Source: Macrostomum lignano (taxonomy: Eukaryota). Taken from it: a stretch of DNA of 64,000 nucleotides. Shown piece after piece: positions 3,701-64,000 of this stretch. Every line of letters starts with the position of its first letter. Within the stretch, counting starts at the first letter, position 1. The notes under the pieces are model-generated. The model made no database searches and was not told where the DNA came from. It was given only the letters and a program-made list of their open reading frames with translations. A program made the position numbers and the translations under genes. The stretch is taken from positions 62,001-126,000 of the forward strand of contig NIVC01000650.1 of assembly GCA_002269645.1 (NCBI GenBank), read 5' to 3'.

Positions 3701-3917
3701 CGATTTCTACGATTTAGTCAGATCGATTGCCGGCGACCTGGTGGAGCAGGTGTCGCTAATTGATGAATTCCGGCATCCGAAGGACGGCCGAATGAGCCTG
3801 TGCTATCGGATTGTTTACAGATCGCACGAGCGGACCCTGACTAGCGAGGAGGCTCGAACAGTTCACGACCAGATTGCCAAGTCTGCTGTGACTCGTTGGG
3901 CCGTGCAGATTCGGTGA
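773..3917 (+). CDS. FARS2: Mitochondrial phenylalanyl-tRNA synthetase; join(773..1113,1939..2320,3210..3917), about 476 aa
   Basis: The translation follows human FARS2 from memory ([59 protein letters not shown]-terminal FDX-ACB domain [10 protein letters not shown]). Junctions AG|gtttgt..cgcag|G (phase 2) and CAG|gtgtgt..cgcag|GCT (phase 0) keep the frame. The N-terminus is R/L/S-rich like a presequence. The start ATG at 773 is tentative. Confidence 0.95.
1170..1780 (+). repeat. 34-bp minisatellite (aatgtataaatcccgtcaccacaaaagtacactc) in FARS2 intron 1
   Basis: Unit read directly; caccac recurs at 1325 and 1359. Confidence 0.95.
2430..3172 (+). repeat. 27-bp minisatellite (agaaaccaagtatacccagtctttcct) in FARS2 intron 2
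   Basis: Tandem units read directly; explains the repetitive ORF 2579..3109. Confidence 0.95.
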
Positions 3918-12600: not shown

Positions 12601-20275
<7,675 letters not shown>

Positions 20276-30026: not shown

Positions 30027-31076
30027 TCAGATCAGGGTCAGCGGCACAGTCTGCCGGTGCTCGTCGCTCCCGGCGCTGCCGCCGCCGCCGCCGCCCCCGC
30101 CGTTCGCCACCACATCGTAATCGCCTGAGTAGGCGCTAGACGAGTGATTGGATGGCACAGGGATCTGCTCGGCCATGCCAGCAGATTGCTGCTGCTGCTG
30201 CAGAGACTGCAGGTAAATGGACGGGTCAGCAGCATAAGCAGCGGTCAATCCGCTGTACATTTGATGCTGCGGCTGCTGCTGCATGTCCAGAGTTGCCGAG
30301 GAGTCCAAGTTAGAAAAAGCAGACTGCTGGTCATAATGCTGCTGGTGATAGTGCTGTTGCTGCTGCTGTTGCTGCAACAGAAGAGCCGACTGCATGTGAT
30401 GCGGATCAACATAAGGAGAGTACAGATTCTGAGTCTGCTGCTGCTGCTGCTCAGGCGCTAGGAGCATTTGGTAGCCGCTAATCTGGTGATGCTGATGAGC
30501 GCTAGATAGCAGATTCAACTGTTGTTGCAGACTCTGCTGATGGTGCTGGCCTAGCAACTGCTGGTTGGCTGGGTACCCCGAGACGGCTGCATTGTTATTG
30601 TCTGGATAGGCGTGGTACAACTGCTGCTGCTGGTGCTGCACGCTCAGGTGATCTTCTGGCGTCATCGACTGCTGCTTTTGCTTCTGTTGCGTTTTGGATT
30701 TTTGCTGTGGTTTCTGCTGTTGGCCAGCGGGCGCTGCGGCTCCAGTAGAAGCTGCGCCTGCGGCGCGTTTCTTCGACTTCGGCTTGTACTTATAGCCGGG
30801 ATTCGCTCTCTTGTGCTCATCCTTGAGTCTGTTTGCCTCGTCAATGTAGCCTTTCTTCTCGTCATCCGGCATTGTTTTCCATTCTTCGCCCAGCTTCCTA
30901 CTGATCTCAGAATTGTGCATCTTGGGATTCTCTTTAGCGATGGCTTTCCGTCGCAGTTTGGCCCAAACCATAAACGGGTTCATTGGCCGCTTCACGTGGC
31001 CGGCTGGGGCTGGCGGTGGGTCGGCTGAGTCCGCTGGCAACAACTGGCCGGCTGAGTGGTCGGGAAGGCCTGTCAT
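30027..31076 (-). CDS. soxB1: SoxB1-type HMG-box transcription factor, intronless, 349 aa
   Basis: HMG box HVKRPMNPFMVW...ENPKMHNSEISRKLGEEWK...YKYKP. The C-terminal TVPLTLI resembles the SoxB1 GTVPLTHI/GTLPLSHM end. The middle is poly-Q. Confidence 0.92.
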   Translation of the reverse strand: MTGLPDHSAGQLLPADSADPPPAPAGHVKRPMNPFMVWAKLRRKAIAKENPKMHNSEISRKLGEEWKTMPDDEKKGYIDEANRLKDEHKRANPGYKYKPKSKKRAAGAASTGAAAPAGQQQKPQQKSKTQQKQKQQSMTPEDHLSVQHQQQQLYHAYPDNNNAAVSGYPANQQLLGQHHQQSLQQQLNLLSSAHQHHQISGYQMLLAPEQQQQQTQNLYSPYVDPHHMQSALLLQQQQQQQHYHQQHYDQQSAFSNLDSSATLDMQQQPQHQMYSGLTAAYAADPSIYLQSLQQQQQSAGMAEQIPVPSNHSSSAYSGDYDVVANGGGGGGGGSAGSDEHRQTVPLTLI

Positions 31077-42609: not shown

Positions 42610-44947
42610 CATGTAGCTCGTACAAAACGTGACAGGTATAGCCGCGTAGTAGAATAAACGGGGAATAAACTATACTTCTACAAGCCTATTGTGCAGCAAT
42701 AACATCAACAGCGCAAAAACAATTAATACGCAGCCCCTCATGCAAAGATCACAGTAGTGAGAGCAGGATTCGGAAGGGCCGTTCGATTCGGACCTGACCC
42801 CGCCTTGCTGAACGGGCCTGTTGCAAGGTGAGAGCAGCAGGAAGTCCTGAACAGGTCGAGGGCTAGGTACGAGAATAATTACGAGGGGCTAGCCCGAACT
42901 CGGCCTGTACTAAGGCAGAGAGATACAGTGTACGACTGCAGAGAGTTGACGAAGCCTCTTTGGCGTTTATTAGATCGATACGCAGGTTAAATACGATACA
43001 TGTACAACGATTGTTTACATAACTGGGTAATAAAATATGAGACAGAGGGGGTGAGTGAAAAGCACGTGTACTTAATAGCAACCCCCAACTCCGCTCTAGC
43101 GACTTGCGCATACGAAGTACACTTGCAACTTACTACAGCAGGACGCGTCCTGAACAGGTTGGGGCTGTAGCTCTCGGCCCGGATCACGCTACCCGCAAGT
43201 TGAAGTCGCCGCCGGCGGCGCAGGAATTGGACAGGCGCTGCAGCTTGTCCCTATCGATTTGTTGTGCCAGCATAGACATGCACTTAGCAAGCGTACGTCT
43301 ATGTTGCATAGTGCTTGCAGAAAATCAATTAAGACAATTAACCCCTACGCCTGTAACGTGTCTAAATTAAATTGATGTTTCCACTTGTTTAAATAAAAAA
43401 AGCGGCTCGCTCAAAATATTTGATAGAAGATAAAAGGTTAGTAATCCCTCTGTAATTTTCTACAAAAAATCAGCAACATCGAAAAGTCGCGATCACAGAA
43501 AATTCTGTCTGTGGTCGCCACTTCTGAGAGTGCAGGTATAAAAGTCTCTCATCTTTACGAGTTGCGGCCGACTTGAGTTGAGGAATGAAGTGGGGGGGCA
43601 GCGGTGTGCGAGGCTTGGACGGATTAAAGCTACCCCGATCGGTTTTTTCGTATCTTTTATTTCATCAAAACAAAGAAAATACATCAGTAAACGTTTGCCA
43701 ACACAATCAGGCGAATTATAACCAGGCGTGTCAGTATTTTATTTGCTCAATATACGAGCGCAGCACTACTAATGCTACAATTGTAATTGACATTACGAGT
43801 ACTTGCAGAAAACTGGCGTCGCATATAAGTGTCTTCCTTAAACGTCATAAGCGTGAAGTCCTCGTTTAATCATCGTTGCCACATCGGGTTGGTTGTCAGT
43901 TGATGGAGCTCGCTTTTGGGATTGTCGGATCTCCTTCCAACGCGCTCGAACCCCCGATATTTCGGTTTGTCGACTCGGCGACCGGAATGACAGCAGCTTA
44001 TTGACTCGAACATCAGGCTCAGCAGGAGCACAAGGCATAGGCCCTTCCGATCGAATAGGTTTACTAAAATAGAAAGATTACTTCGAAGTATTAAAAACGT
44101 TAAGCATGCGGCACTGAAAGTGAGGGCCAGTTTTGAAAAGCACAGCCAACAGGGCTAAAGTGGAATGCCGAATAAAATACTCTTATGAATGTTTTATATA
44201 TTAAAATCATAACAACTGTTTTGAAATCGCAAAATATCTTTCTAAAAGTTTTGCTGAAATGTCGACCAGGGGATTGTGATGATTATTTGATGATGAGAGT
44301 TGATGATTTTCTCCCATAAGAACCAACGCCCAATCGCTTAGAGTGCAAGCAGCCTGACTATGAGACAATCGAAAACAAAAAACAGATACTGTATCTGTAT
44401 CCGTACGACCGTACTCCGGAAATCTTCCAGCCAGGTTCATTCTCATCTACTTGACCGGGCGAGGGATTCCCCCCTATTTGTGGTGAGGACCCCTTCACAT
44501 CAGTTTGTGATTTTTTGTGTGTTTGTGCTTTATTTTATGCGTCATTTTAAAGCAAATTGCGACCTAAAAAATAATCAAAGCTTGATGCCAAACTATTAAA
44601 ACTGTAACGAACACAGAACTATTCAAATATCGAGAGACTTCCAACTCAAACGATAAATATTCTGTCAAATATGGTATATGCATGCGACTCGCGGTTACCT
44701 CGGCGAGGTTTCGGTCGTCTGTCGACGTCGCTGGGAAATTGGATACTCTCAGTCTCTCAAACTGCATTGACGTTCATCAGACGAAGGCATTTTTAAGCCT
44801 AATGCGACTCAAAAAAGTATTCGTAGGTTGCTATTTCAGAAACGAATTTTCTGTCAGATTTGTTACAATCTAATTAAATAAAATTGCAATGAACGCCGAA
44901 CTACTTAAAATCAAGTGACTTCGAATTCAAACGAAAAAATCAGCCAA

Positions 44948-45385
<438 letters not shown>

Positions 45386-45647
45386 ATATCAAATTTTACC
45401 TATCTAATACGCGCGCCTATTCCCATTAGCTCAATGACTACGTCACATCAGGATGGTGCATGCTCATTCAGCTAAAATCCAAGTATGAACCGTGATTCGT
45501 GTGCAGAAGAAAGGAAGAAAAAGAGCAACAGCAATTAACTTAAAGAGTTTTGTTGTCATACATTTCGGGAGATGGAGCACTGTCACAACACTCACATACT
45601 GTGCGTTCTCTAGAAACGCTTTAAGTAACATGCTGAGTCGCAAGAAT

Positions 45648-48600
45648 TCAATACGGTCTGGCCAGCTGTCTCAGCTGCAGCTGGCGAATCTTCTCGTCCA
45701 GCTCTCGCTTCAACTCGGTGTCGGGGCTGCAGTACTTCTCAGCCACCAGCAGCTCCTGCTCGTCTGCGTCTTCTCGTTGAGACACATCCTCAATCCATTC
45801 CGCCGCGGCATCCTCGCTTTCAGTCCCCAGCTCGAGTCTCAGAGCCCACACCAGCGCGTCGAAGTTCATGTAGAAAAATGAGACACTGTTAAGCCCCATC
45901 TGCAGCGGAAAGCACTCAGCCAGGGCACCAGTCACGAACTGAAGCTGAGGACGCTGCTCAAACCGCAAGCAGAACTTCCAAGCCGAGTCACAGCTCAGTA
46001 GGTGTTGCCACACAGCCTCGGGTGTAGCCTCAGACAGTGACCTCTCAGCAGGCCAATCGATACCTCTGCTCACCTCGTGACCTCGGCAGTCGCCTATGAC
46101 TTTTGCTGCGGCATGTCGGTTGCCAAACTTGAGACAGGCCAGCGCTTTGAGGGCCTCCCGCGCCGAGCGGGCGCAGTTTGGCAATCTGGCGATCAGCTCT
46201 GTCAGTGACGCTAGCGAGCTCGCGTTGACAATGCCATGGGAAAGGCGCAACAGACAGCTGTTAATTACGTCCGGAATCTCCCAGTATTCGATACTGCTAG
46301 AATCGCTTACCGGATTAGACATTACAATTGGCAGGATTAGAAATGGATGAAAGTAGAATCTGGCCGAATCATCCAGCGGCTTGAGACTGTTCTTAAACTG
46401 CATCAGCAGCGATGGCAGCTGATCAATCACTATTCTCAGGGTGTCTGCAATGTTTTTCAGTGTCGACTCGATTGAGGATTTTTTGTTGTCAACGCCTTTG
46501 AGATATAACGCGGCATCCTTCAAAAAAAAATGGCTCAGGACTTGACCATGAATATTGTCAGGAGTGCAGCTGCTCTCAACACTGTCAGCTAGCATCTGCA
46601 TTGATTGCCTTGTGAGATTGACGAGATTTTCTGGCCGCCATTCCTCGGGCGATGTTTTCTCCAGCATTCGAAACGTGATGGTTTTTACATGGTACGGCTT
46701 GACGCCCTTCACATTGTAGCCAGACTCGTGCGTTATCACCTTCTTGACGAGGTACTTCAGTGCGATGAACATCTGACCCTGGACTGTGTTGAGACTTCGC
46801 AGTAGCAGTCTCTCAAGGAAGCTGGTGCTCACCCGAAGCTCATGGCCACCTCGACCAGGAGAAGCAGCGTGCACCACGTGACAGGGCGATGTATCAAAAG
46901 CGTCAATGTGCTGCTGAAGTGACCGCAGCACCGGCTTGGGAATTTTGGACTTGGACACTCGATCTGGCAGCAGTGGCGCGATGGCCGGGTAGCTGCATAG
47001 ACGACTGGCGACCACGTGGTCCACCGCCGGTCTCAGATTGGATCCGTATGATGCTTCAGACGGGTTCGATGCTGCAATGCAAATTGTATCAATCACTTTT
47101 TGCAGACGAACCTGTGCTACATGCTACTGATGAATGTTTATTTCCAAGCTCTTACCAAATCCGGGGCACACAATGTGACCGTTGCGGAACTCTTGCTGAA
47201 CAACCGCGCCGCCGCACTTGCACACTCCCCTAGGATGGTAGAGCTTGCCCGCAATCAGCCGCATCATGTCGATGTCCGACTCGATGTCCGTTCTACCGTC
47301 CACCGTTTTCAAATTGTTTCCCCAGCCTTCTGAGTAGCTACCAACAACATAGATTCCATTGTTGTTTAGTCTTTTTCTTAGGATCTTCTGCAGTACGTCC
47401 GCAACTGAGGTTTGCAGAGCGGCTCTGGAGTCTAAGAATCCGGACTGGGAAAGTTTCGCGTGCAACTGCAGGCTGAGCTCGGCATCGCTTGGCGGAACAG
47501 CACTGAAATCGTAAGCAAGTTTTTGTCATCTATTTGTAGATACGATCGAGCTATACGAAAACATTTAGAAACCAGTTATAACTTGTATATACCCACTTTT
47601 CAACACTAGGCTCATCCATTTCTTCTGAATCCTCACTCTCTGAACTATTCTTTGACCTCAGAACGAATTTTAGCACTGTTTCTTCCACATCCGACATAGC
47701 GCCGTAGTCAAAATCCGACGCGTTGCTTAAATTCGACAAGCCGTCTGCGTCATTGAGAGATGCTTCGTCCACAAAGCGTCGCTCTACGAGGTTAGGAACT
47801 TTGATTATTTTAAATCTTTCGTCAAGAAGGATGTCAATATCGGCCTGGGCGGTTGCTAGCAAGTCCACTATATCCTGATGTAAACAAAAAATTGCAAAAT
47901 AATAAGCTGAAGAGCCTGAACTTGTCAAAATGTCGACATCAGCTTGTGCTTTGATAAGCAACTCAACAACACGTCGATGACCCTTATACGATGCAATGTG
48001 CAAGGCTGCCTCGCCAGCATTTGTTTGAAGATTGACGTCCGCTTGGGCTTTAATAAGTAGGTCAACCACTTCGTGATAACCATTCTGCGACGCGATGAAT
48101 ATCGGTGGACAACCGTCGTCTTTTTGTAGATTGACGTCTGCTTGAGCTTTGATTAGCAATTCGACCACTTTGGGGTGACCATTGTGAGCGGCAATGTTCA
48201 GCGGCGTCTCGCCTGTGACCTGCTGCAAATCTACAATGGCGTGAGCCTTGATCAGCGAGTCAACAATTTGATTGTAACCTCCATTGGCAGCGATGTAGAG
48301 AGCAGTCTCGCCGCCAGCTCTTTGCAAATTGACATTTGCTCCGGCTTCGATGAGCAATTTCACCACTTCAGAGTGGCCGTTGAGTGCTGCAGCTTGTAGC
48401 GGCGTTTCACCAGAGTATTTCTGAGGATTTAGTCTCGCATCTGCTTTTATAAGCGAGCCCACTACCGGTGCGTGGCCATTGTGCGATGCGCAGTGAATAG
48501 GTGTTTCACCATTGTGCGAGGAAAGATTAACGTTGGCCTGAGCTCGAATGAGCGCGTCAACCATCTCTTTGTGGCCGTTCTGAGATGCGACGTGAATCGC

Positions 48601-49870
48601 CTGTGTCACCATCGAGAGACTGAAGATCAACATCTGCCATCCCTCCGAGGAGTGACTGCACCGCTTTTAAGCTGTAATTCAGTGCCGCGATGTAAATTGG
48701 CGACAAGCCAAACTGGCTCTGCAGGTTAACATCAGCTTGCGCTTTAATCAGCAGTTCACCCACATCTTCGTGACCGTTTTGCAGCGCGATGTAAAGCGGC
48801 GAATAGCGGTCATTCTTTTCTTGAAGACTAACATCGGCTTTGGCTTCAAGTAAGGAGCTCACTACTCGAGTATGCCCGTTGAATGACGCGGCGTACAAAG
48901 GAGATTCTCCCGAGACCCTCTGAAGATTTACGTCGGCTTGTGCTCGGATGAGGAATTCTAGCACTCGCTGATTGCCAGTTTGCGCTGCTATGTAGAGAGC
49001 TGTAGCGCCACTATTTCTTTGTGCATCAATGTCGGCATGGGCTTTGACAAGTTCAGTCACCATTGGCAGATTGCCGTACAGGGTGGCAACGTGAAGAGGA
49101 ACGGAGCCGAACCTGTTGTCTTTTAGATTGACGTCTGAGCGAGCCTTCAGAAGTTCGCGAACTACCATGAGATGGCCTTTATCAATAGCAACGTGTAGGG
49201 CAGTGTTGCCTGTCTGCGTCTGAAGATCAGGATTTGACAACGCTCTGATTAATGACTCAACAAACTGCGAATGACCAATTTGCGAGGCGATGTGAAGAGG
49301 TGAGCAGAAATCGTTAGCTTGAGTACTGACGTCAGCTTGTGCTTTGATGAGGGTGTCAATCACTGTCATGTGACCGTTTCGAACAGCAATGTGAACTGGC
49401 GATTCGCCATCGCAATTGCCAAGATTGACGTCGGCTTGTGCTCTGATCAGCGACTGCACAACTTTCTGGTGGCCATTCTGAGCTGCAGCGAACAGGGGCG
49501 ACTCGCCGGCGACGCTCGGACAGTTGACGTCTACTTGCAGTGTGATGAGGTGGTCAACAACTTGTAGATGACCGTTTTTTGCGGCAAGGAACAGAGGCGA
49601 CTCGCCTAAATTGGATGGCGGATCCGGGTCGGCTCGAAAGCTGAGCAGCAGCTTGACGGAGGCCAGCTGCCCGAAGGCGCAGGCCAGCTGTAGCGGGGAG
49701 CCGCGCATCTGGTAGAAGTCGAAGGTGTCGCAGAGGCTCGCTCCGTTGTCTACACAACGCCGCAGGGTTTTCCCGTCTCCTGTAGCCACAGCCGACAGGA
49801 ACTCTTGCTGACTGGTGGACGGCGAATCAGATTCGCTGTCAACTCGCTGAATCCTGTCCGCGCCCTGCAT
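45648..49870 (-). CDS. Ankyrin-repeat / Mab-21 (cGAS-like receptor, cGLR) nucleotidyltransferase fusion; complement(join(45648..47071,47156..47502,47597..48600,48602..49870)), about 1,347 aa after removing 1 extra nt at 48601
   Basis: About 19 ANK repeats (GExPLxxAAxNGHxxVVxxLIxAxADVN). The NTase has VVGSYSEG, SDIDMM and VDHVVA, and the Mab-21 motifs ELRVSTSFLERLL, ALKYLVK, PYHVKTITFRM and LSHFF. Introns 47596-47503 (phase 2) and 47155-47072 (phase 1) are GT-AG and join the ORFs in frame. The start ATG is tentative. Confidence 0.88.
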
Positions 49871-50309
49871 CAGGAAGATGCAAACTGTGCTCAGTAAATC
49901 TATTAGCGAGCGCACGGCTGCTCAAAGCTGTATAGCATTGCGGAACACTCGCAGCAGTTGTGACTTAACCAGAGAGAAACATACTTGCAAATGCTTGAAT
50001 TATATAGGAGATAATTTATGCACACTGCGGGCAGAGAAACAGCCGGCGCAGTGTAGATAAAAAAGAGTACATACCGGTACAGAATGCAGTGGCCTGTGTA
50101 CTGGGTAACTGGCTGGTTGAAGCATAGGGAGAGAGAAATGAATGTTGAAAGCTCTATGTAAGCATCTTTATTGCAGTGTTATGCTATGCTATAAGGGCAC
50201 TCTGCTTATTGCTGGCCCACCAGTTTAGCTTTAAAAGTTAATATGCGACTTAATCAGCATATAACTAGCGCTGATACCTTTTTGACCATGATCTTGGTGT
50301 TTGACACGT

Positions 50310-51290
50310 GAAGTATGGTGTGGGTGCCATGGTGTGGGGTTTGGGGTGGGTGTCATGGTGTGGGGTTTGGGTGGGTGTCATGGTGTGGGGTTTGGGTGGG
50401 TGTCATGGTGTGGGGTTTGGGTGGGTGTCATGGTGTGGGGTTTGGGGTGGGTGTCATGGTGTGGGGTTTGGGTGGGCGCCATCGTGTGGAATTGGGGTGG
50501 GTGTCATGGTGTGGGGTTTTGGGTGGGTGTCATGGTGTGGAATTGGGGTGGGTGTCATGGTGTGGGGTTTGGGGTGGGTGTCATGGTGTGGAATTTGGGT
50601 GGGTGTCATGGTGTGGGGTTTGGGGTGGGTGTCATGGTGTGGAATTTGGGTGGGTGTCATGGTGTGGGGTTTGGGGTGGGTGTCATGGTGTGGGGTTTAG
50701 GTGGGTGTCATGGTGTGGGGTTTGGGGTGGGTGCCATGATGTGGGGTTCGGGGTGGGTGTCATGGTGTGGGGTTTGGATGGGTGACATGGTGTGGAATTG
50801 GGGTGGGTGCCATGATGTGGGGTTCGGGGTGGGTGTCGTGGTGTGGAGTTTGGGTGGGTGTCATGGTGTGGGGTTTGAGGTGGGTGCCATGGTGTGGGGT
50901 TTGGGGTGGGTGTCATGGTGTGGGGTTTGAGTGGGCGCCATGGTGTGGTTTTGGGGTGGGTGTCATGGTGTGGGGTTTTGGGTGATGCCATGGTGTGGGG
51001 TTTGGGGTGGGTGTCATGGTGTGGGGTTTGGGGTGGGTGTCATGGTGTGGAATTGGGGTGGGTGCCATGATGTGGGGTTTGGGGTGGCCATGAGATGGTG
51101 AGAGGTTTGGAGTGGGAGTCATGGTGTGGGGTTCGGGGTGGGTGCCATGATGTGGAATTGGGGTGGGTGCCATGATGTGGGGTTTGGGGTGGCCATGAGA
51201 TGGTGAGAGGTTTGGAGTGGGAGTCATGGTGTGGGGTTCGGGGTGGGTGCCATGATGTGGGGTTTCAGGGGGGGGGGCATAATGTGGTGT
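50310..51290 (+). repeat. G-rich ~27-bp minisatellite (ggtgtcatggtgtggggtttggggtg) about 440 bp upstream of the cGLR ATG
   Basis: Tandem units read directly. Confidence 0.95.
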
Positions 51291-51693
51291 GTGGTTTGGC
51301 GTAGGTGCTAGTGCTATAGTGTAGTGAGAGATTTTAAGAGGCTGTCTTCGCTTTTATTAAGATCGGAAAGATTTTGCTATAGACACTACTGTCTGGCTAA
51401 ACAGTGAGTATATATTGCTACGTGCTATCAGCAGTTGAATTTGCAGTTAAGGCTGTTTTATAGTCATAAAACTAGCAATCTACGCCCCCCGTTGGGGAGC
51501 CAAAGAAATGCAATACACGTTTTTTTAATAAGCTACATGTATCCTTGAAATCTTAAAAAATCTCCTGTCAAACCTTGTAAGCCTTGACATGTCAGTTATC
51601 CCCCCCACAAGCTTTAACATATCAACTTCCCCCCTTGACATCTCAGCAATGCCCCCAATAAGCCTTGGAAATCTAAAAATATCTGTCAACCTT

Positions 51694-51755
51694 CTAACCC
51701 TAACCCTAGCCTAACCCTAACCCTAACCCTAACCCTAACCCTAACCTAACCCTAA
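51694..51755 (+). repeat. Interstitial telomere-like (CCCTAA)~10 tract; degenerate echo at about 52130-52176
   Basis: Read directly; lies within a ~440-bp tandemly duplicated unit. Confidence 0.85.
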
Positions 51756-52349
51756 AGCATTGAAATTTCAGTAATTCTCCCTAAGAGTCATTATAGCACT
51801 ACTACAGCATTATAGCGATTCCTTGCAAGCCTCAACATCGTAGGGATTCCCAAATGAATCTCTTAACTTCGACATGAAGCTTCTTTTATTTTTTACATTA
51901 CGCTTTTTTATCAGCGATCCCTCCCCTGAGGAGGCATCAAATAATGTAATAAAAAGTTTTCAATAAACTACATGTAGCTTCTGACTTTAGCCTTGAAATC
52001 TCATTTATACCCCCGTGAGCCTTGACATCTCAGCTATTCCCCCCGTAAGCCTTGACATGTCAGCAATGGCCCCCATAAACCTTGAAATCTAAAAAATCCA
52101 CTGTTAACCTTGAAACCCGATAAAATATAACCCTCAACCCACACCTGACCTAAACCTAACTTTAACCCAACCTAAAGCCTTGAAATCTCGGCAATTCTTC
52201 TCCCCTAAGCCTTAACATTTTAGTGATTCTTTCTTTAAGAATCACAGCACTATAACGATTTCCACCAAGCTTTGACATCGTAGCAACTCCCAAATGAATC
52301 TTTTAACTTCGACATGACTTTTCTTTTATGTATACATAGTGCTAATTTT

Positions 52350-55730: not shown

Positions 55731-58700
55731 AGACTGGGCTTCCCCAGGTGATGGAGACTGGGGGCTTCCCCAGGTGATGGAGACTGGGCTTCCCCAGGTG
55801 ATGGAGACTGGGCTTCCCCAGGTGATGGAGACTGGGGGCTTCCCCAGGTGATGGAGACTGGGGGCTTCCCCAGGTGATGGAGACTGGGCTTCCCCAGGTG
55901 ATGGAGACTGGGGCTTCCCCAGGTGATGGAGACTGGGGCTTCCCCAGGTGATGGAGACTGGGGCTTCCCCAGGTGATGGAGACTGGGGGCTTCCCCAGGT
56001 GATGGAGACTGGACTTCCCCAGGTGATGGAGACTGGGGGCTTCCCCAGGTGATGGAGACTGGACTTCCCCAGGTGATGGAGACTGGGGCTTCCCCAGGTG
56101 ATGGAGACTGGGGCTTCCCCAGGTGATGGAGACTGGGGCTTCCCCAGGTGATGGAGACTGGGGCTTCCCCAGGTGATGGAGACTGGGGGCTTCCCCAGGT
56201 GATGGAGACTGGGGGCTTCCCCAGGTGATGGAGACTGGGGGCTTCCCCAGGTGATGGAGACTGGGCTTCCCCGGGTGATGGAGACTGGACTTCCCCAGAT
56301 GATGGAGACTGGGCTTCCCCAGGTGATGGAGACTGGGGGCTTCCCCAGGTGATGGAGACTGGGCTTCCCCGGGTGATGGAGACTGGACTTCCCCAGATGA
56401 TGGAGACTGGGCTTCCCCAGGTGATGGAGACTGGACTTCCCCAGGTGATGGAGACTGGACTTCCCCAGGTGATGGAGACTGGGGCTTCCCCAGGTGATGG
56501 AGACTGGGGGCTTCCCCAGGTGATGGAGACTGGGGGCTTCCCCAGGTGATGGAGACTGGGGGCTTCCCCAGGTGATGGAGACTGGGGGCTTCCCCAGGTG
56601 ATGGAGACTGGGGGCTTCCCCAGGTGATGGAGACTGGGCTTCCCCAGGTGATGGAGACTGGGCTTCCCCAGGTGATGGAGACTGGACTTCCCCAGGTGAT
56701 GGAGACTGGACTTCCCCAGGTGATGGAGACTGGGCTTCCCCAGGTGATGGAGACTGGGCTTCCCCAGATGATGGAGACTGGGCTTCCCCGGGTGATGGAG
56801 ACTGGGGGCTTCCCCAGGTGATGGAGACTGGGCTTCCCCGGGTGATGGAGACTGGACTTCCCCAGATGATGGAGACTGGGCTTCCCCAGGTGATGGAGAC
56901 TGGACTTCCCCAGGTGATGGAGACTGGGCTTCCCCAGATGATGGAGACTGGACTTCCCCAGGTGATGGAGACTGGGCTTCCCCAGATGATGGAGACTGGG
57001 CTTCCCCAGGTGATGGAGACTGGGGGCTTCCCCAGGTGATGGAGACTGGGGGCTTCCCCAGGTGATGGAGACTGGGCTTCCCCAGGTGATGGAGACTGGG
57101 GGCTTCCCCAGGTGATGGAGACTGGGGGCTTCCCCAGGTGATGGAGACTGGGGGCTTCCCCAGGTGATGGAGACTGGACTTCCCCAGGTGATGGAGACTG
57201 GGGCTTCCCCAGGTGATGGAGACTGGGGGCTTCCCCAGGTGATGGAGACTGGGGGCTTCCCCAGGTGATGGAGACTGGGGGCTTCCCCAGGTGATGGAGA
57301 CTGGGGGCTTCCCCAGGTGATGGAGACTGGGCTTCCCCAGGTGATGGAGACTGGACTTCCCCAGGTGATGGAGACTGGGGGCTTCCCCAGGTGATGGAGA
57401 CTGGGGGCTTCCCCAGGTGATGGAGACTGGGGGCTTCCCCAGGTGATGGAGACTGGGGGCTTCCCCAGGTGATGGAGACTGGGCTTCCCCGGGTGATGGA
57501 GACTGGACTTCCCCAGGTGATGGAGACTGGACTTCCCCAGGTGATGGAGACTGGGCTTCCCCAGGTGATGGAGACTGGGCTTCCCCAGATGATGGAGACT
57601 GGGCTTCCCCGGTGATGGAGACTGGGGCTTCCCCAGGTGATGGAGACTGGGCTTCCCCGGGTGATGGAGACTGGACTTCCCCAGATGATGGAGACTGGGC
57701 TTCCCCAGGTGATGGAGACTGGACTTCCCCAGGTGATGGAGACTGGACTTCCCCAGGTGATGGAGACTGGGGGCTTCCCCAGGTGATGGAGACTGGGGGC
57801 TTCCCCAGGTGATGGAGACTGGGGGCTTCCCCAGGTGATGGAGACTGGGGGCTTCCCCAGGTGATGGAGACTGGGCTTCCCCAGGTGATGGAGACTGGGC
57901 TTCCCCAGGTGATGGAGACTGGACTTCCCCAGGTGATGGAGACTGGACTTCCCCAGGTGATGGAGACTGGGGGCTTCCCCAGGTGATGGAGACTGGGGGC
58001 TTCCCCAGGTGATGGAGACTGGGGGCTTCCCCAGGTGATGGAGACTGGGGGCTTCCCCAGGTGATGGAGACTGGGGCTTCCCCAGGTGATGGAGACTGGG
58101 GCTTCCCCAGGTGATGGAGACTGGGGCTTCCCCAGGTGATGGAGACTGGGCTTCCCCAGGGTGATGGAGACTGGACTTCCCCAGATGATGGAGACTGGGC
58201 TTCCCCAGGTGATGGAGACTGGGGGCTTCCCCAGGTGATGGAGACTGGGCTTCCCCGGGTGATGGAGACTGGACTTCCCCAGATGATGGAGACTGGGCTT
58301 CCCCAGGTGATGGAGACTGGACTTCCCCAGGTGATGGAGACTGGACTTCCCCAGGTGATGGAGACTGGGGCTTCCCCAGGTGATGGAGACTGGGGCTTCC
58401 CCAGGTGATGGAGACTGGGCTTTCCCAGGTGATGGAGACTGGGCTTCCCCAGGTGATGGAGACTGGGCTTCCCCAGGTGATGGAGACTGGGGGCTTCCCC
58501 AGGTGATGGAGACTGGGGGCTTCCCCAGGTGATGGAGACTGGGGGCTTCCCCAGGTGATGGAGACTGGACTTCCCCAGGTGATGGAGACTGGGGGCTTCC
58601 CCAGGTGATGGAGACTGGGGGCTTCCCCAGGTGATGGAGACTGGGGCTTCCCCAGGTGATGGAGACTGGGGGCTTCCCCAGGTGATGGAGACTGGGGGCT

Positions 58701-61700
58701 TCCCCAGGTGATGGAGACTGGGGGCTTCCCCAGGTGATGGAGACTGGGGCTTCCCCAGGTGATGGAGACTGGGGGCTTCCCCAGGTGATGGAGACTGGGG
58801 GCTTCCCCAGGTGATGGAGACTGGGCTTCCCCGGGTGATGGAGACTGGACTTCCCCAGATGATGGAGACTGGGCTTCCCCAGGTGATGGAGACTGGGGGC
58901 TTCCCCAGGTGATGGAGACTGGGCTTCCCCAGGTGATGGAGACTGGACTTCCCCAGGTGATGGAGACTGGGCTTCCCCAGGTGATGGAGACTGGACTTCC
59001 CCAGGTGATGGAGACTGGACTTCCCCAGGTGATGGAGACTGGGGGCTTCCCCAGGTGATGGAGACTGGGGCTTCCCCAGGTGATGGAGACTGGGGCTTCC
59101 CCAGGTGATGGAGACTGGGGGCTTCCCCAGGTGATGGAGACTGGGGCTTCCCCAGGTGATGGAGACTGGGGGCTTCCCCAGGTGATGGAGACTGGGCTTC
59201 CCCAGGTGATGGAGACTGGGCTTCCCCAGGTGATGGAGACTGGACTTCCCCAGGTGATGGAGACTGGACTTCCCCAGGTGATGGAGACTGGGCTTCCCCA
59301 GGTGATGGAGACTGGGCTTCCCCAGATGATGGAGACTGGGCTTCCCCAGGTGATGGAGACTGGACTTCCCCAGGTGATGGAGACTGGGCTTCCCCGGTGA
59401 TGGAGACTGGACTTCCCCAGGTGATGGAGACTGGGCTTCCCCAGGTGATGGAGACTGGAATTCCCCAGGTGATGGAGACTGGGCTTCCCCAGGTGATGGA
59501 GACTGGACTTCCCCAGGTGATGGAGACTGGGCTTCCCCAGATGATGGAGACTGGGCTTCCCCAGGTGATGGAGACTGGGGGCTTCCCCAGGTGATGGAGA
59601 CTGGGGGCTTCCCCAGGTGATGGAGACTGGGCTTCCCCAGGTGATGGAGACTGGGGCTTCCCCAGGTGATGGAGACTGGGGGCTTCCCCAGGTGATGGAG
59701 ACTGGGGGCTTCCCCAGGTGATGGAGACTGGACTTCCCCAGGTGATGGAGACTGGGGGCTTCCCCAGGTGATGGAGACTGGGGGCTTCCCCAGGTGATGG
59801 AGACTGGGGGCTTCCCCAGGTGATGGAGACTGGGGGCTTCCCCAGGTGATGGAGACTGGGGGCTTCCCCAGGTGATGGAGACTGGGCTTCCCCAGGTGAT
59901 GGAGACTGGACTTCCCCAGGTGATGGAGACTGGGGGCTTCCCCAGGTGATGGAGACTGGGGGCTTCCCCAGGTGATGGAGACTGGGGGCTTCCCCAGGTG
60001 ATGGAGACTGGGGGCTTCCCCAGGTGATGGAGACTGGGCTTCCCCGGTGATGGAGACTGGACTTCCCCAGGTGATGGAGACTGGACTTCCCCAGGTGATG
60101 GAGACTGGGCTTCCCCAGGTGATGGAGACTGGGCTTCCCCAGATGATGGAGACTGGGCTTCCCCGGGTGATGGAGACTGGGGGCTTCCCCAGGTGATGGA
60201 GACTGGGCTTCCCCGGTGATGGAGACTGGACTTCCCCAGATGATGGAGACTGGGCTTCCCCAGGTGATGGAGACTGGACTTCCCCAGGTGATGGAGACTG
60301 GACTTCCCCAGGTGATGGAGACTGGGGGCTTCCCCAGGTGATGGAGACTGGGGGCTTCCCCAGGTGATGGAGACTGGGGCTTCCCCAGGTGATGGAGACT
60401 GGGGGCTTCCCCAGGTGATGGAGACTGGGCTTCCCCAGGTGATGGAGACTGGGCTTCCCCAGGTGATGGAGACTGGACTTCCCCAGGTGATGGAGACTGG
60501 ACTTCCCCAGGTGATGGAGACTGGGGCTTCCCCAGGTGATGGAGACTGGGGGCTTCCCCAGGTGATGGAGACTGGGGGCTTCCCCAGGTGATGGAGACTG
60601 GGGGCTTCCCCAGGTGATGGAGACTGGGCTTCCCCAGGTGATGGAGACTGGGCTTCCCCAGGTGATGGAGACTGGACTTCCCCAGGTGATGGAGACTGGA
60701 CTTCCCCAGGTGATGGAGACTGGGCTTCCCCAGGTGATGGAGACTGGGCTTCCCCAGATGATGGAGACTGGGCTTCCCCGGGTGATGGAGACTGGGGGCT
60801 TCCCCAGGTGATGGAGACTGGGCTTCCCCGGTGATGGAGACTGGACTTCCCCAGATGATGGAGACTGGGCTTCCCCAGGTGATGGAGACTGGACTTCCCC
60901 AGGTGATGGAGACTGGGCTTCCCCAGATGATGGAGACTGGACTTCCCCAGGTGATGGAGACTGGGCTTCCCCAGATGATGGAGACTGGGCTTCCCCAGGT
61001 GATGGAGACTGGGGGCTTCCCCAGGTGATGGAGACTGGGGGCTTCCCCAGGTGATGGAGACTGGGCTTCCCCAGGTGATGGAGACTGGGGGCTTCCCCAG
61101 GTGATGGAGACTGGGGGCTTCCCCAGGTGATGGAGACTGGGGGCTTCCCCAGGTGATGGAGACTGGACTTCCCCAGGTGATGGAGACTGGGGCTTCCCCA
61201 GGTGATGGAGACTGGGGCTTCCCCAGGTGATGGAGACTGGGGGCTTCCCCAGGTGATGGAGACTGGGGCTTCCCCAGGTGATGGAGACTGGGGCTTCCCC
61301 AGGTGATGGAGACTGGACTTCCCCAGGTGATGGAGACTGGGGGCTTCCCCAGGTGATGGAGACTGGGGCTTCCCCAGGTGATGGAGACTGGGGGCTTCCC
61401 CAGGTGATGGAGACTGGGGGCTTCCCCAGGTGATGGAGACTGGGCTTCCCCAGGTGATGGAGACTGGACTTCCCCAGGTGATGGAGACTGGACTTCCCCA
61501 GGTGATGGAGACTGGGCTTCCCCAGGTGATGGAGACTGGGCTTCCCCAGATGATGGAGACTGGGCTTCCCCGGTGATGGAGACTGGGGGCTTCCCCAGGT
61601 GATGGAGACTGGGCTTCCCCGGTGATGGAGACTGGACTTCCCCAGATGATGGAGACTGGGGGCTTCCCCAGGTGATGGAGACTGGGGGCTTCCCCAGGTG

Positions 61701-64000
61701 ATGGAGACTGGGGGCTTCCCCAGGTGATGGAGACTGGACTTCCCCAGGTGATGGAGACTGGGGGCTTCCCCAGGTGATGGAGACTGGGGACTTCCCCAGG
61801 TGATGGAGACTGGGGGCTTCCCCAGGTGATGGAGACTGGGGGCTTCCCCAGGTGATGGAGACTGGGGCTTCCCCAGGTGATGGAGACTGGGCTTCCCCAG
61901 GTGATGGAGACTGGACTTCCCCAGGTGATGGAGACTGGGGGCTTCCCCAGGTGATGGAGACTGGGGGCTTCCCCAGGTGATGGAGACTGGGGGCTTCCCC
62001 AGGTGATGGAGACTGGGCTTCCCCGGGTGATGGAGACTGGACTTCCCCAGATGATGGAGACTGGGCTTCCCCAGGTGATGGAGACTGGACTTCCCCAGGT
62101 GATGGAGACTGGACTTCCCCAGGTGATGGAGACTGGGGCTTCCCCAGGTGATGGAGACTGGGGGCTTCCCCAGGTGATGGAGACTGGGGGCTTCCCCAGG
62201 TGATGGAGACTGGGGGCTTCCCCAGGTGATGGAGACTGGGCTTCCCCAGGTGATGGAGACTGGGCTTCCCCAGGTGATGGAGACTGGACTTCCCCAGGTG
62301 ATGGAGACTGGACTTCCCCAGGTGATGGAGACTGGGGCTTCCCCAGGTGATGGAGACTGGGGGCTTCCCCAGGTGATGGAGACTGGGGGCTTCCCCAGGT
62401 GATGGAGACTGGGGCTTCCCCAGGTGATGGAGACTGGGCTTCCCCAGGTGATGGAGACTGGGCTTCCCCAGGTGATGGAGACTGGACTTCCCCAGGTGAT
62501 GGAGACTGGACTTCCCCAGGTGATGGAGACTGGGCTTCCCCAGGTGATGGAGACTGGGCTTCCCCAGATGATGGAGACTGGGCTTCCCCGGGTGATGGAG
62601 ACTGGGGGCTTCCCCAGGTGATGGAGACTGGGCTTCCCCGGTGATGGAGACTGGACTTCCCCAGATGATGGAGACTGGGCTTCCCCAGGTGATGGAGACT
62701 GGACTTCCCCAGGTGATGGAGACTGGGCTTCCCCAGATGATGGAGACTGGACTTCCCCAGGTGATGGAGACTGGGCTTCCCCAGATGATGGAGACTGGGC
62801 TTCCCCAGGTGATGGAGACTGGGGGCTTCCCCAGGTGATGGAGACTGGGGGCTTCCCCAGGTGATGGAGACTGGGCTTCCCCAGGTGATGGAGACTGGGG
62901 GCTTCCCCAGGTGATGGAGACTGGGGGCTTCCCCAGGTGATGGAGACTGGGGGCTTCCCCAGGTGATGGAGACTGGACTTCCCCAGGTGATGGAGACTGG
63001 GGGCTTCCCCAGGTGATGGAGACTGGGGGCTTCCCTAGGTGATGGAGACTGGGGGCTTCCCCAGGTGATGGAGACTGGGGGCTTCCCCAGGTGATGGAGA
63101 CTGGGGGCTTCCCCAGGTGATGGAGACTGGACTTCCCCAGGTGATGGAGACTGGGGGCTTCCCCAGGTGATGGAGACTGGGGCTTCCCCAGGTGATGGAG
63201 ACTGGGGCTTCCCCAGGTGATGGAGACTGGGGGCTTCCCCAGGTGATGGAGACTGGGCTTCCCCAGGTGATGGAGACTGGACTTCCCCAGGTGATGGAGA
63301 CTGGACTTCCCCAGGTGATGGAGACTGGGCTTCCCCAGGTGATGGAGACTGGGCTTCCCCAGATGATGGAGACTGGGCTTCCCCAGGTGATGGAGACTGG
63401 GGGCTTCCCCAGGTGATGGAGACTGGGCTTCCCCGGGTGATGGAGACTGGACTTCCCCAGATGATGGAGACTGGGCTTCCCCAGGTGATGGAGACTGGAC
63501 TTCCCCAGGTGATGGAGACTGGACTTCCCCAGGTGATGGAGACTGGGGGCTTCCCCAGGTGATGGAGACTGGGGGCTTCCTCAGGTGATGGAGACTGGGG
63601 GCTTCCCCAGGTGATGGAGACTGGGCTTCCCCAGGTGATGGAGACTGGGCTTCCCCAGGTGATGGAGACTGGGCTTCCCCAGGTGATGGAGACTGGACTT
63701 CCCCAGGTGATGGAGACTGGACTTCCCCAGGTGATGGAGACTGGGCTTCCCCAGGTGATGGAGACTGGGCTTCCCCAGATGATGGAGACTGGGCTTCCCC
63801 AGGTGATGGAGACTGGGGCTTCCCCAGGTGATGGAGACTGGGCTTCCCCGGTGATGGAGACTGGACTTCCCCAGATGGAGACTGGAGACTGGGCTTCCCC
63901 AGGTGATGGAGACTGGACTTCCCCAGGTGATGGAGACTGGGCTTCCCCAGATGATGGAGACTGGACTTCCCCAGGTGATGGAGACTGGGCTTCCCCAGAT
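55731..64000 (+). repeat. 24-26-bp satellite (gatggagactgg[g/a][g][g]cttccccaggt), more than 8.2 kb, running off the window
   Basis: Tandem units read directly; variants differ mainly in G-run length. Confidence 0.99.

What the first reader, a model, noticed from the sequence alone, without database searches (positions are those of the whole stretch)
45648..49870. Ankyrin-array cGAS-like receptor (ANK19-cGLR) with intact catalytic triad: candidate innate-immune cyclic-nucleotide synthase
Seen: four ORFs that look separate in the track join through two short phase-compatible GT-AG introns and one 1-nt indel into a protein of about 1,350 aa. It has about 19 ankyrin repeats, an acidic linker (DAD...SESEDSEEMDE), an NTase core (GSYSEG 47325-47342, D-I-D 47268-47276, third Asp in VDHVVA at 47019-47021), a Mab-21 helical lobe and about 200 further aa. 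Known: GS + DxD + D is the cGAS/OAS/Mab-21 metal-binding signature, and invertebrate cGLRs make cyclic dinucleotides for STING-type signalling. N-terminal repeat fusions are known among invertebrate cGLRs, so the architecture alone is not unprecedented. Inference: the long ANK solenoid may replace nucleic-acid sensing with protein-ligand sensing or autoinhibition. This would be a poorly characterised immune sensor in a lineage where, to my knowledge, the pathway is little studied.
Basis: partly seen in the sequence, partly recalled or inferred. Interest (0 to 1): 0.88.

Follow-up and report, generated by a model that had tools for sequence, protein, structure and literature searches.

The report
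Flatworm ankyrin-repeat cGAS-like enzyme gene
This is a real gene of the flatworm Macrostomum lignano that fuses about 19 ankyrin repeats to a cGAS-like enzyme domain, but the protein is already in public databases and its family has already been catalogued, so it is a sound but largely known candidate immune sensor.

Summary
On the minus strand, 49870..45648 encodes a 1,347-aa protein with about 19 ankyrin (ANK) repeats, an acidic linker, a cGAS/Mab-21-fold nucleotidyltransferase and a 228-aa C-terminal domain. Joining the ORFs needs two GT-AG introns and removal of one G near 48600. All motif coordinates are exact.

The window is Macrostomum lignano assembly Mlig_3_7, contig NIVC01000650.1 (100% identical over 8 kb). 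GenBank annotates a truncated 935-aa product here (PAA79144.1). UniProt A0A1I8FZN3 is 1346/1347 identical to the repaired model and reads through the frameshift site. A 96%-identical sister locus (PAA54193.1) is also intact, so the extra G is probably an assembly error.

An AlphaFold2 model (pLDDT 84) matches cGAS, MAB21L1, Sp-cGLR1 and MB21D2. The GS/DxD/D motif is intact in 85 of 92 family domains.

M. lignano has dozens of such paralogs. Li et al. 2023 already list M. lignano ANK-cGLRs and cloned five, none among their 15 selected active enzymes. Product, ligand, the role of the ANK array and the presence of STING remain untested. The basic catalytic core (pI 9.3) does not favour loss of nucleic-acid binding.

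Verdict: new member of a known kind, modest interest.

The parts
45648..49870 (-). Whole coding region of the ANK-cGLR gene (ATG 49870, TGA 45650..45648). The repaired product is 1,347 aa. It corresponds to GenBank BOX15_Mlig028332g2 and UniProt A0A1I8FZN3.
   Evidence: Gene model. Window 44000-52000 is 100% identical to NIVC01000650.1. A0A1I8FZN3 is 1346/1347 identical.
47597..49870 (-). Exon 1: N-terminal cap, about 19 ankyrin repeats and the acidic linker.
   Evidence: Pfam Ank_2 E 1.1e-162. 33-residue register. Donor GAAAA|GTGGGT, as in the annotated sister copy.
48600..48601 (-). Frameshift site: GG where the sister locus has a single G. It splits the ANK array into two ORFs in this assembly.
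   Evidence: Direct comparison with L002. UniProt A0A1I8FZN3 and A0A1I8IYS0 carry the window allele at all diagnostic positions they cover (29 of 29 and 27 of 27) and read through the site.
48631..48633 (-). ATG used by the deposited GenBank annotation (PAA79144.1, 935 aa). It lies just 5' of the frameshift site, in the reading frame that applies after it. Its first ~10 codons are an out-of-frame reading of an ANK repeat.
   Evidence: and the coordinate mapping. ORF 47551..48633.
47799..49810 (-). Ankyrin-repeat solenoid (residues ~21-690), pI 5.55.
47597..47798 (-). Acidic, low-complexity linker (residues ~691-757, pI about 4.05; DAD...SESEDSEEMDE).
47503..47596 (-). Intron 1 (94 nt, GT..AG, phase 2).
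   Evidence: Same place and phase in paralog P0003.
47156..47502 (-). Exon 2: N-lobe of the nucleotidyltransferase, with GS (47342..47337) and D-I-D (47276..47268).
47072..47155 (-). Intron 2 (84 nt, GT..AG, phase 1).
   Evidence: Identical position and phase in P0003 and in the sister copy.
46335..47071 (-). First part of exon 3: third catalytic Asp (47021..47019) and the Mab-21 C-lobe helix bundle (RVSTSFLER, YHVKT, HFFL motifs).
   Evidence: Pfam Mab-21_C 24.3 bits. Profile hits to cGAS chains. hhalign to cGAS and to a more distant Mab-21/cGLR-like protein of unknown source. Foldseek.
45648..46334 (-). Family-specific C-terminal domain (last 228 aa, pI about 4.9) plus the stop codon. It is confidently folded but has no known relative.
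   Evidence: AF2 pLDDT 86.8. Best PDB fold match E 0.76. No Pfam or PDB sequence match.

Best explanation
The locus is the Macrostomum lignano gene BOX15_Mlig028332g2. It is one member of a large, lineage-specific family in which an N-terminal ankyrin solenoid is fused to a cGAS-like receptor (cGLR) nucleotidyltransferase and a family-specific C-terminal domain.

Shown here:
- the gene structure;
- the identity of the locus;
- the cGAS/Mab-21 fold;
- the intact and family-wide conserved G-S / D-x-D / D metal-binding motif;
- purifying selection between the two near-identical copies;
- an independently predicted protein carrying this allele that reads through the frameshift site. The extra G is therefore most likely a consensus error of the PacBio-based assembly, and the true product is the full 1,347-aa protein.

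Inferred, not shown: like characterised cGLRs, the enzyme is held inactive until a ligand-induced rearrangement aligns the active site. It then condenses two NTPs into a cyclic dinucleotide or related nucleotide second messenger that activates a downstream receptor. The basic catalytic core (pI 9.3) could still bind nucleic acid. The acidic ANK array and acidic linker are the most plausible regulatory or partner-binding module, acting by autoinhibition through charge complementarity, by scaffolding, or by recognising a protein ligand.
For: Identity:
- Window 44000-52000 is 100% identical to GCA_002269645.1 NIVC01000650.1.
- UniProt A0A1I8FZN3 is 1346/1347 identical to the repaired model and matches the window allele at all 29 positions that distinguish it from the sister copy.

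Splicing:
- Both introns are conserved in position and phase in annotated paralogs.
- The GenBank annotation derives from a genome-guided RNA-seq transcriptome (PMC5730564).

Fold:
- AF2 pLDDT 84.2, pTM 0.86.
- Foldseek's top 33 hits are cGAS, MAB21L1, Sp-cGLR1 (8gjy) and MB21D2, followed by bacterial CD-NTases.
- The family profile hits only cGAS among PDB sequences with E below 1 (E 0.007-0.02).
- hhalign gives 98.5% probability to a more distant Mab-21/cGLR-like protein of unknown source.

Catalysis:
- The motif VVGS-X20-DIDM-X52-VDH fits the published definition GS X8-20 [DE]h[DE]h X50-90 h[DE]h.
- 85 of 92 family domains keep all five residues.
- dN/dS is 0.26 overall and 0.19 in the catalytic core between the two copies.

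Precedent:
- Li et al. 2023 list M. lignano ANK-cGLRs and ANK-cGLR as a recognised architecture.
Against: - No biochemical evidence exists for any member. The five M. lignano paralogs cloned by Li et al. are not among their 15 selected active enzymes.
- The residue before GS is Val, not the Q/T of the published motif.
- Sequence similarity to characterised cGLRs is confined to the C-lobe. The N-lobe assignment rests on the motif pattern and a predicted structure, and residue-level superposition of the three acidic residues could not be inspected.
- Published surveys report cGAS and STING as lost in other flatworms (PMC4117786, PMC13563047). I could not test whether M. lignano has a STING.
- The frameshift is present in the deposited assembly, and reads were not available to settle it.
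Confidence: 0.6

Rival explanations
1. The extra G is real. This copy is a recently disabled duplicate in the partly duplicated DV1 karyotype. It would yield at most an ANK-only protein of about 437 aa (49870..48557) or a poorly translated 935-aa product, while the intact sister locus carries the function.
For: The frameshift is in the deposited assembly, and the annotators had to call a 935-aa ORF. The assembly contains 180 Mb of blocks at least 95% identical, so redundant copies free to decay are common. dN/dS in the ANK part upstream of the frameshift is 0.54, though from only 8 substitutions.
Against: Two independently predicted UniProt proteins carry the window allele at all diagnostic positions they cover (29 of 29 and 27 of 27) and read through the site. 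There is no other disabling change in 4 kb, and overall dN/dS is 0.26. The change turns a single G into GG in a PacBio/Canu assembly of a duplicated region, a typical consensus error. The assembly paper itself uses intact transcript ORFs to compare assembly quality.
Confidence: 0.2
2. The enzyme is active but is not a cGAS-STING-type sensor. It would make a different product (for example linear 2'-5' oligonucleotides as OAS does, or a non-canonical nucleotide), or signal to a non-STING receptor, possibly involving the family-specific C-terminal domain.
For: cGAS and STING are reported lost in Schistosoma and Schmidtea, and parasitic flatworms score 0 cGLR / 0 STING in Li et al. Table S5. The conserved 228-aa C-terminal domain has no structural relative in the PDB. 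The five cloned paralogs were not among the selected 2'3'-cGAMP or CDN producers.
Against: The closest structural matches are cGAS-clade proteins rather than OAS. Every characterised metazoan cGLR with this motif makes a cyclic dinucleotide (PMC9980059). STING in M. lignano was not searched for, so its absence is unproven.
Confidence: 0.25
3. The Mab-21 domain is a non-catalytic scaffold, as proposed for MAB21L1/2, and the protein acts through ANK-mediated protein interactions only.
For: MAB21L1 is among the fold matches. No activity has been shown for any family member.
Against: [quoted passage not shown] Here all five catalytic residues are kept in 92% of dozens of diverged paralogs, which is hard to explain without catalysis. 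Pfam Mab-21 (PF03281) does not match, so this is not a MAB21L orthologue.
Confidence: 0.1

Closest known systems
Macrostomum lignano ANK-cGLR paralogs catalogued by Li et al. 2023 (PAA86972.1, PAA45980.1, PAA68676.1, PAA67649.1, PAA58690.1, PAA68216.1; PMC9980059 Tables S2/S3)
   Same: Same species, same architecture (N-terminal Ank_2 repeats plus a cGLR domain) and the same core motifs (GS[FY][AS]E[GA]WG, [SA]D[IV]D, RVSTSFLER, YHxKT, HFF).
   Different: These are different paralogs. Neither PAA79144.1 nor PAA54193.1 was found in the parts of the tables held here. This protein has one of the longer ANK arrays (about 19 repeats, against NTase-domain start positions of 307-974 in most relatives).
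Human cGAS (e.g. PDB 5vdq, 6ct9) and coral Sp-cGLR1 (8gjy)
   Same: Bilobed Pol-beta NTase core plus helix-bundle fold (Foldseek E 2.7e-6 to 8e-5, TM 0.53-0.58 on the target). GS / [DE]x[DE] / D motif. WRLSFS-like and SYHVKT motifs aligned by HMM and hhalign.
   Different: About 12-13% identity. No cGAS-type disordered basic N-terminus; a 690-aa ANK solenoid and an acidic linker take its place. Adds a 228-aa C-terminal domain. GS-to-DxD spacing is 20 rather than 11, and DxD-to-D spacing is 54 rather than 91. Ligand and product are unknown.
[quoted passage not shown] 2023, Fig. 4C)
   Same: An ANK-cGLR fusion in an invertebrate with an expanded cGLR repertoire.
   Different: In the coral only 3 of 42 cGLRs carry extra domains, and 87% of all cGLRs are stand-alone. 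In M. lignano the ANK fusion appears to be the dominant form.
MAB21L1 / MB21D2 (PDB 5eom, 7lt1)
   Same: Same fold (Foldseek E 6e-5 to 5e-4). Pfam Mab-21_C match.
   Different: No PF03281 match. Li et al.'s Figure 1A legend says Mab21L1/2/3 lack a predicted functional active site, although their text also counts Mab21L1/L2 among complete-site cGLRs. Here the active-site motif is complete and conserved.
Bacterial CD-NTases of CBASS (e.g. EfCdnE 7x4c, CdnG 7ljn)
   Same: The same caged NTase architecture is detectable (Foldseek E 0.014-0.08).
   Different: A much weaker match. Eukaryotic, intron-containing gene. No operon-encoded effector.

Membership tests
cGAS-like receptors (cGLR), criteria of Li et al. 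2023 | Active-site motif h[QT]GS X8-20 [DE]h[DE]h X50-90 h[DE]h | tested here: met
   VVGS-X20-DIDM-X52-VDH (definition quoted). One deviation: Val instead of Q/T before GS. All five key residues are kept in 85/92 family domains.
cGAS-like receptors (cGLR), criteria of Li et al. 2023 | Sequence homology across both the NTase core and the C-terminal helix bundle | tested here: inconclusive
   The C-lobe is clearly homologous: Pfam Mab-21_C 24.3 bits against a 24.1 cutoff; the profile hits only cGAS among PDB sequences with E below 1, at E 0.007; hhalign gives 98.5% probability to a Mab-21/cGLR-like protein from the third-Asp strand onward. No sequence method aligned the N-lobe (GS, DxD) to a characterised cGLR.
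cGAS-like receptors (cGLR), criteria of Li et al. 2023 | Predicted structural homology to known cGLR / CD-NTase enzymes | tested here: met
   AF2 pLDDT 84.2, pTM 0.86. Foldseek's top 33 PDB hits are cGAS, MAB21L1, Sp-cGLR1 and MB21D2, followed by CD-NTases. GS follows strand 50-53, DxD opens strand 77-88, and the third Asp lies in strand 132-140 of the model.
cGAS-like receptors (cGLR) | Ligand-activated synthesis of a nucleotide second messenger | not testable with these tools
   Needs enzyme assays. The five M. lignano paralogs cloned by Li et al. are not among their 15 selected active enzymes.
cGLR-STING pathway | A STING (or other) receptor for the product encoded in the same genome | not tested
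   No tool here can search the M. lignano genome or proteome with a STING profile. The literature reports loss of STING in Schistosoma and Schmidtea. M. lignano is absent from Li et al. Table S5.
Ankyrin-repeat proteins | Tandem 33-residue ANK repeats | tested here: met
   Ank_2 E 1.1e-162 and Ank E 2.3e-120 with 17 stretches. About 19 repeats in register.
MAB21L1/2 developmental proteins | Pfam Mab-21 (PF03281) full-domain match, with no conserved functional active site | tested here: not met
   No PF03281 hit at E<=1. The catalytic motif is complete and conserved.

The most novel reading that the evidence does not exclude
M. lignano keeps dozens of catalytically intact ANK-cGLR paralogs, in a phylum where cGAS and STING are otherwise reported lost. 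Each paralog carries a conserved C-terminal domain of unknown fold. The most novel reading not excluded is that this family forms a flatworm-specific sensing system. In it the variable-length ANK solenoid would recognise protein ligands (pathogen or danger-associated) rather than nucleic acid. The nucleotide signal would be read by a non-STING receptor, or would act through the C-terminal domain.
Probability: 0.15. Interest if true: 0.7.

Novelty: new member of a known kind. Interest (0 to 1): 0.3.

Why it matters
The gene shows that at least one free-living flatworm has kept and greatly expanded cGAS-like receptors. The model flatworms usually studied (Schistosoma, Schmidtea) are reported to lack the pathway.

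M. lignano is transgenic- and RNAi-tractable. The family would therefore be a practical entry point for asking what ANK-fused cGLRs sense, and what reads their signal where STING may be missing.

This particular locus adds nothing that public databases and the 2023 cGLR survey do not already contain. The exception is the note that the GenBank model at this locus (935 aa) is truncated by a probable single-base assembly error.

Tried and rejected
- **First homologue search.** It returned only M. lignano proteins at 60% identity or less, so I provisionally assumed the window came from another species. That was wrong. The word-indexed search had missed the near-identical entries, which the exhaustive representative search found.
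- **Species identification with the neighbouring mitochondrial Phe-tRNA synthetase exon.** Uninformative: the best hits were about 60% identical, from molluscs and arthropods.
- **PDB profile search with an alignment that still contained ANK repeats.** It was swamped by ankyrin proteins and was repeated with ANK-free sequences.
- **phmmer of the single sequence against the PDB.** It found nothing.
- **hhalign of the family profile against human cGAS.** It aligns only the C-lobe (probability 10%), so it cannot map the catalytic residues.
- **The C-terminal 228-aa domain.** There was no Pfam hit, no PDB sequence hit and no PDB fold hit, and it showed no similarity to the C-terminal extension of the more distant relative P0231.
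- **A 30-nt GT..AG segment spanning the frameshift site.** I considered it as a possible micro-intron and rejected it by inspecting the sequence. Its length is a multiple of 3, so it would not restore the frame.
- **Literature search for the locus tags.** It found nothing.
- **A STING search with the last word-indexed protein search.** I did not run it. Vertebrate hits would fill the candidate list, and a negative result would be uninterpretable.
Full report
**1. What is in the sequence**

Between 49915 and 45648 the minus strand carries four consecutive long ORFs of 452, 360, 113 and 482 codons.

- The ATG is at 49870.
- A one-base frame change lies near 48600, inside an ankyrin repeat.
- There are two short GT..AG introns.
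- The TGA stop is at 45650..45648.

Pfam scores the N-terminal 759 residues as ankyrin repeats (Ank_2 E 1.1e-162, with 17 separately scored Ank repeats). In the C-terminal 589 residues it finds only Mab-21_C, just above its cutoff (24.3 against 24.1 bits). Laid out in a 33-residue register, the array has about 19 repeats plus a cap. This is far beyond chance.

**2. Where the window comes from, and what is already deposited**

The first word-indexed homology search returned only Macrostomum lignano proteins, at 60% identity or less. The exhaustive profile search then found near-identical entries. Fetching their loci settled the origin.

- Window 44000-52000 is 100% identical to M. lignano assembly Mlig_3_7 (GCA_002269645.1), contig NIVC01000650.1.
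- The gene deposited there is BOX15_Mlig028332g2 (PAA79144.1). It is 935 aa and spans window 48633..45648. The annotators took the longest ORF around the frameshift site, which starts at an ATG just 5' of that site in the downstream reading frame.
- A sister locus on NIVC01002952.1 is 96% identical in DNA.
- At the critical point the window reads GACACAGGCGATT and the sister copy reads GACACAGCGATT.

Wudarski et al. 2017 (PMC5730564) describe this assembly as PacBio/Illumina/454 data assembled with Canu. It contains 180 Mb of duplicated blocks at least 95% identical, because line DV1 carries extra large chromosomes. The GenBank annotation comes from a genome-guided RNA-seq transcriptome.

**3. 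Is the frameshift real?**

The two copies differ at 65 of 4,041 coding positions, giving 29 amino-acid differences. dN/dS is 0.26 overall and 0.19 in the catalytic core.

Two UniProt proteins from an independent prediction settle most of the question. A0A1I8FZN3 carries the window allele at all 29 diagnostic positions, and A0A1I8IYS0 carries it at the 27 it covers. Both read straight through the site as ..QSLDGDTAIHVASQNGH...

A0A1I8FZN3 is 1346/1347 identical to the repaired window model and starts at the same Met. I therefore judge the extra G to be an assembly consensus error (about 0.75). A real, very recent disabling mutation in one redundant copy remains possible (about 0.2). Read data would decide.

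**4. Splice sites**

The RNA-seq-derived models of this locus and its sister read ..SVEN|AVPP.. across intron 1. At the sister locus this corresponds to the donor GAAAA|GTGGGT, and the window has the same sequence there. Intron 1 is therefore 47596..47503 and the protein has 1,347 residues.

In a 56%-identical paralog (P0003, locus L001) intron 2 sits at the identical codon and phase (PGY^A^SSP against PGF^A^SNP). In that paralog intron 1 lies at the same place in the linker and in the same phase.

I did not see the reads themselves.

**5. What the C-terminal half is**

*Fold.* An AlphaFold2 model of the 589 C-terminal residues, built with a 19-sequence alignment, is confident (pLDDT 84.2, pTM 0.86). 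Foldseek against the PDB returns, as its first 33 hits, only human or porcine cGAS, MAB21L1, the coral cGLR Sp-cGLR1 (8gjy) and MB21D2. E-values run from 2.7e-6 and TM-scores are 0.5-0.58 on the target. Bacterial CD-NTases follow.

*Sequence.* An ANK-free family profile hits only cGAS chains in the PDB at E below 1 (E 0.007-0.02, over the SYHVKT region). It aligns with 98.5% probability to a more distant Mab-21/cGLR-like protein of unknown source, from the third-Asp strand through the helix bundle.

*Published definition.* Li et al. 2023 (PMC9980059) define cGLRs by three criteria: the motif h[QT]GS X8-20 [DE]h[DE]h X50-90 h[DE]h, homology across both lobes, and predicted structural homology. 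Here the motif is VVGS-X20-DIDM-X52-VDH. It fits except for Val before GS.

*Position in the model.* GS follows the first core strand, DID opens the next long strand, and the third Asp lies in a later strand. This is the layout expected of a Pol-beta-type NTase, from general knowledge of the fold. I could not inspect coordinates, so clustering of the three carboxylates is inferred.

*Conservation.* Aligned to the family HMM, 92 M. lignano domains cover all five positions, and 85 of them keep G-S, D, D, D. This is the strongest argument available here that catalysis matters.

**6. The rest of the protein**

- The ANK array is acidic (pI 5.55) and the linker strongly acidic (about 4.05).
- The catalytic core is basic (9.26) and the last ~220 residues are acidic (4.9).
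- Li et al. associate pI above 8.5 with nucleic-acid-sensing cGLRs.
- The charge pattern is compatible with an acidic ANK array and linker masking a basic groove. That reading is inference only.
- The last 228 residues form a confidently predicted alpha/beta domain (pLDDT 86.8).
- This domain has no Pfam match, no PDB sequence match and no PDB fold match (best E 0.76). It also shows no detectable similarity to the C-terminal extension of the more distant relative P0231.

**7. Family context and prior knowledge**

The profile search of 1.84 billion representatives found 796 proteins at E<=0.001 and 83 at E<=1e-30. All nine strong representatives whose source was looked up are from M. lignano. 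A tenth, weaker hit that was also looked up (P0231, E 7e-16) comes from an unnamed ENA assembly. Those nine clusters contain fragments and products of two proteome versions, so the real gene number is "dozens", not exactly 83.

NTase domains start anywhere from residue ~300 to ~970 in most relatives, so ANK arrays vary widely in length.

[quoted passage not shown] They list ANK-cGLR as a recognised minority architecture. Their Table S2 records Ank_2 domains in six M. lignano cGLRs. Their Table S3 shows five M. lignano catalytic-domain constructs (#89-93) cloned for the screen.

Those sequences visibly share this family's motifs. None is named among the 15 selected active enzymes. The two accessions of this locus pair were not found in the truncated tables held here.

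Earlier surveys report joint loss of cGAS and STING in Schistosoma (PMC4117786) and in Schmidtea (PMC13563047). Whether M. lignano has STING could not be tested with the tools at hand.

**8. Mechanism, with what is shown and what is not**

Shown:
- a transcribed, spliced gene;
- the ANK-linker-cGLR-C-terminal domain architecture;
- the cGAS-type fold;
- a conserved catalytic motif;
- purifying selection.

Inferred from the characterised members of the fold (cGAS, Drosophila cGLR1, Sp-cGLR1; PMC9980059): ligand-triggered activation and synthesis of a cyclic dinucleotide or related signal that is read by a downstream receptor.

Unknown: the ligand, the product, the receptor, and the roles of the ANK array and the C-terminal domain.

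Rivals:
- a truly frameshifted, decaying copy (0.2);
- an active enzyme with a non-canonical product or receptor (0.25);
- a non-catalytic scaffold (0.1), which the motif conservation makes unlikely.

**9. Verdict**

However, the protein is already in UniProt and GenBank, and its family, including the ANK fusion in this very species, is already in the cGLR literature.

It is a new, uncharacterised member of a known kind. The only small new point is that the GenBank model at this locus is truncated by a probable one-base assembly error. Interest is 0.3.

The wider question has more potential than this single locus: why a free-living flatworm keeps dozens of intact ANK-cGLRs when its relatives lack the pathway, and what reads their signal.

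Noticed in passing
window 55731-63998 (runs off the window end): A 24-bp satellite (AGACTGGGCTTCCCCAGGTGATGG) with about 334 copies at 94% match and GC 0.62. It fills the last 8.3 kb of the window.
   Followed up: no
window 44947-45384 and 50316-51265: The gene is bracketed by tandem arrays: (ACAG)n of 110 copies about 260 bp downstream of the stop, and a 26-bp minisatellite of 37 copies about 450 bp upstream of the ATG. The window holds more than 20 distinct minisatellite arrays in all, in line with the 15% simple/tandem repeat content reported for this genome.
   Followed up: partly
window 43838-44038 (-): UniProt A0A1I8FZN3 replaces the final Tyr and stop with a 73-aa tail (PIRSEGPMPCAPAEPDV...HAYDV). 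This tail is encoded by the small ORF at 43838..44038, 1.6 kb further downstream beyond the (ACAG)n array. The transcript-derived GenBank models stop at 45648. This alternative 3' exon may be a prediction artefact or a splice variant.
   Followed up: partly
window 49870-48602 compared with 48599-45648; L002: Divergence between the two gene copies is uneven: 8 differences in 1,269 nt upstream of the frameshift site against 57 in 2,772 nt downstream (Fisher p 0.0006; dS 0.010 against 0.04-0.05). This suggests gene conversion or a mosaic assembly over the 5' ANK half.
   Followed up: partly
residues 89-180 of the C-terminal 589 (window ~47238-46960): Invariant His/Cys residues (H89, C94, H109, C141, C179, H180) occur across the family, in an insertion between the DxD strand and the C-lobe. 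They could form a zinc site in a different place from the cGAS zinc thumb. This was not examined structurally.
   Followed up: no
window 1793-3917 (+): Exons of a mitochondrial phenylalanyl-tRNA synthetase (tRNA-synt_2d plus FDX-ACB). A 27-bp tandem repeat array (2483-3167) lies between two of them.
   Followed up: partly
window 30027-31076 (-) and 15550-16122 (+): A 349-aa ORF with an HMG box (E 2e-24) and a weak JmjC/cupin fragment. These are neighbouring genes with no evident link to the cGLR gene.
   Followed up: no
window 49871-49990 (-); L002: Upstream of the ATG the window has an in-frame TGA 17 codons before Met1. The sister copy's annotated 5'-partial CDS runs on for 31 more codons in a shifted register. 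The copies therefore differ by an indel in the 5' UTR, and Met1 at 49870 is the likely start.
   Followed up: partly
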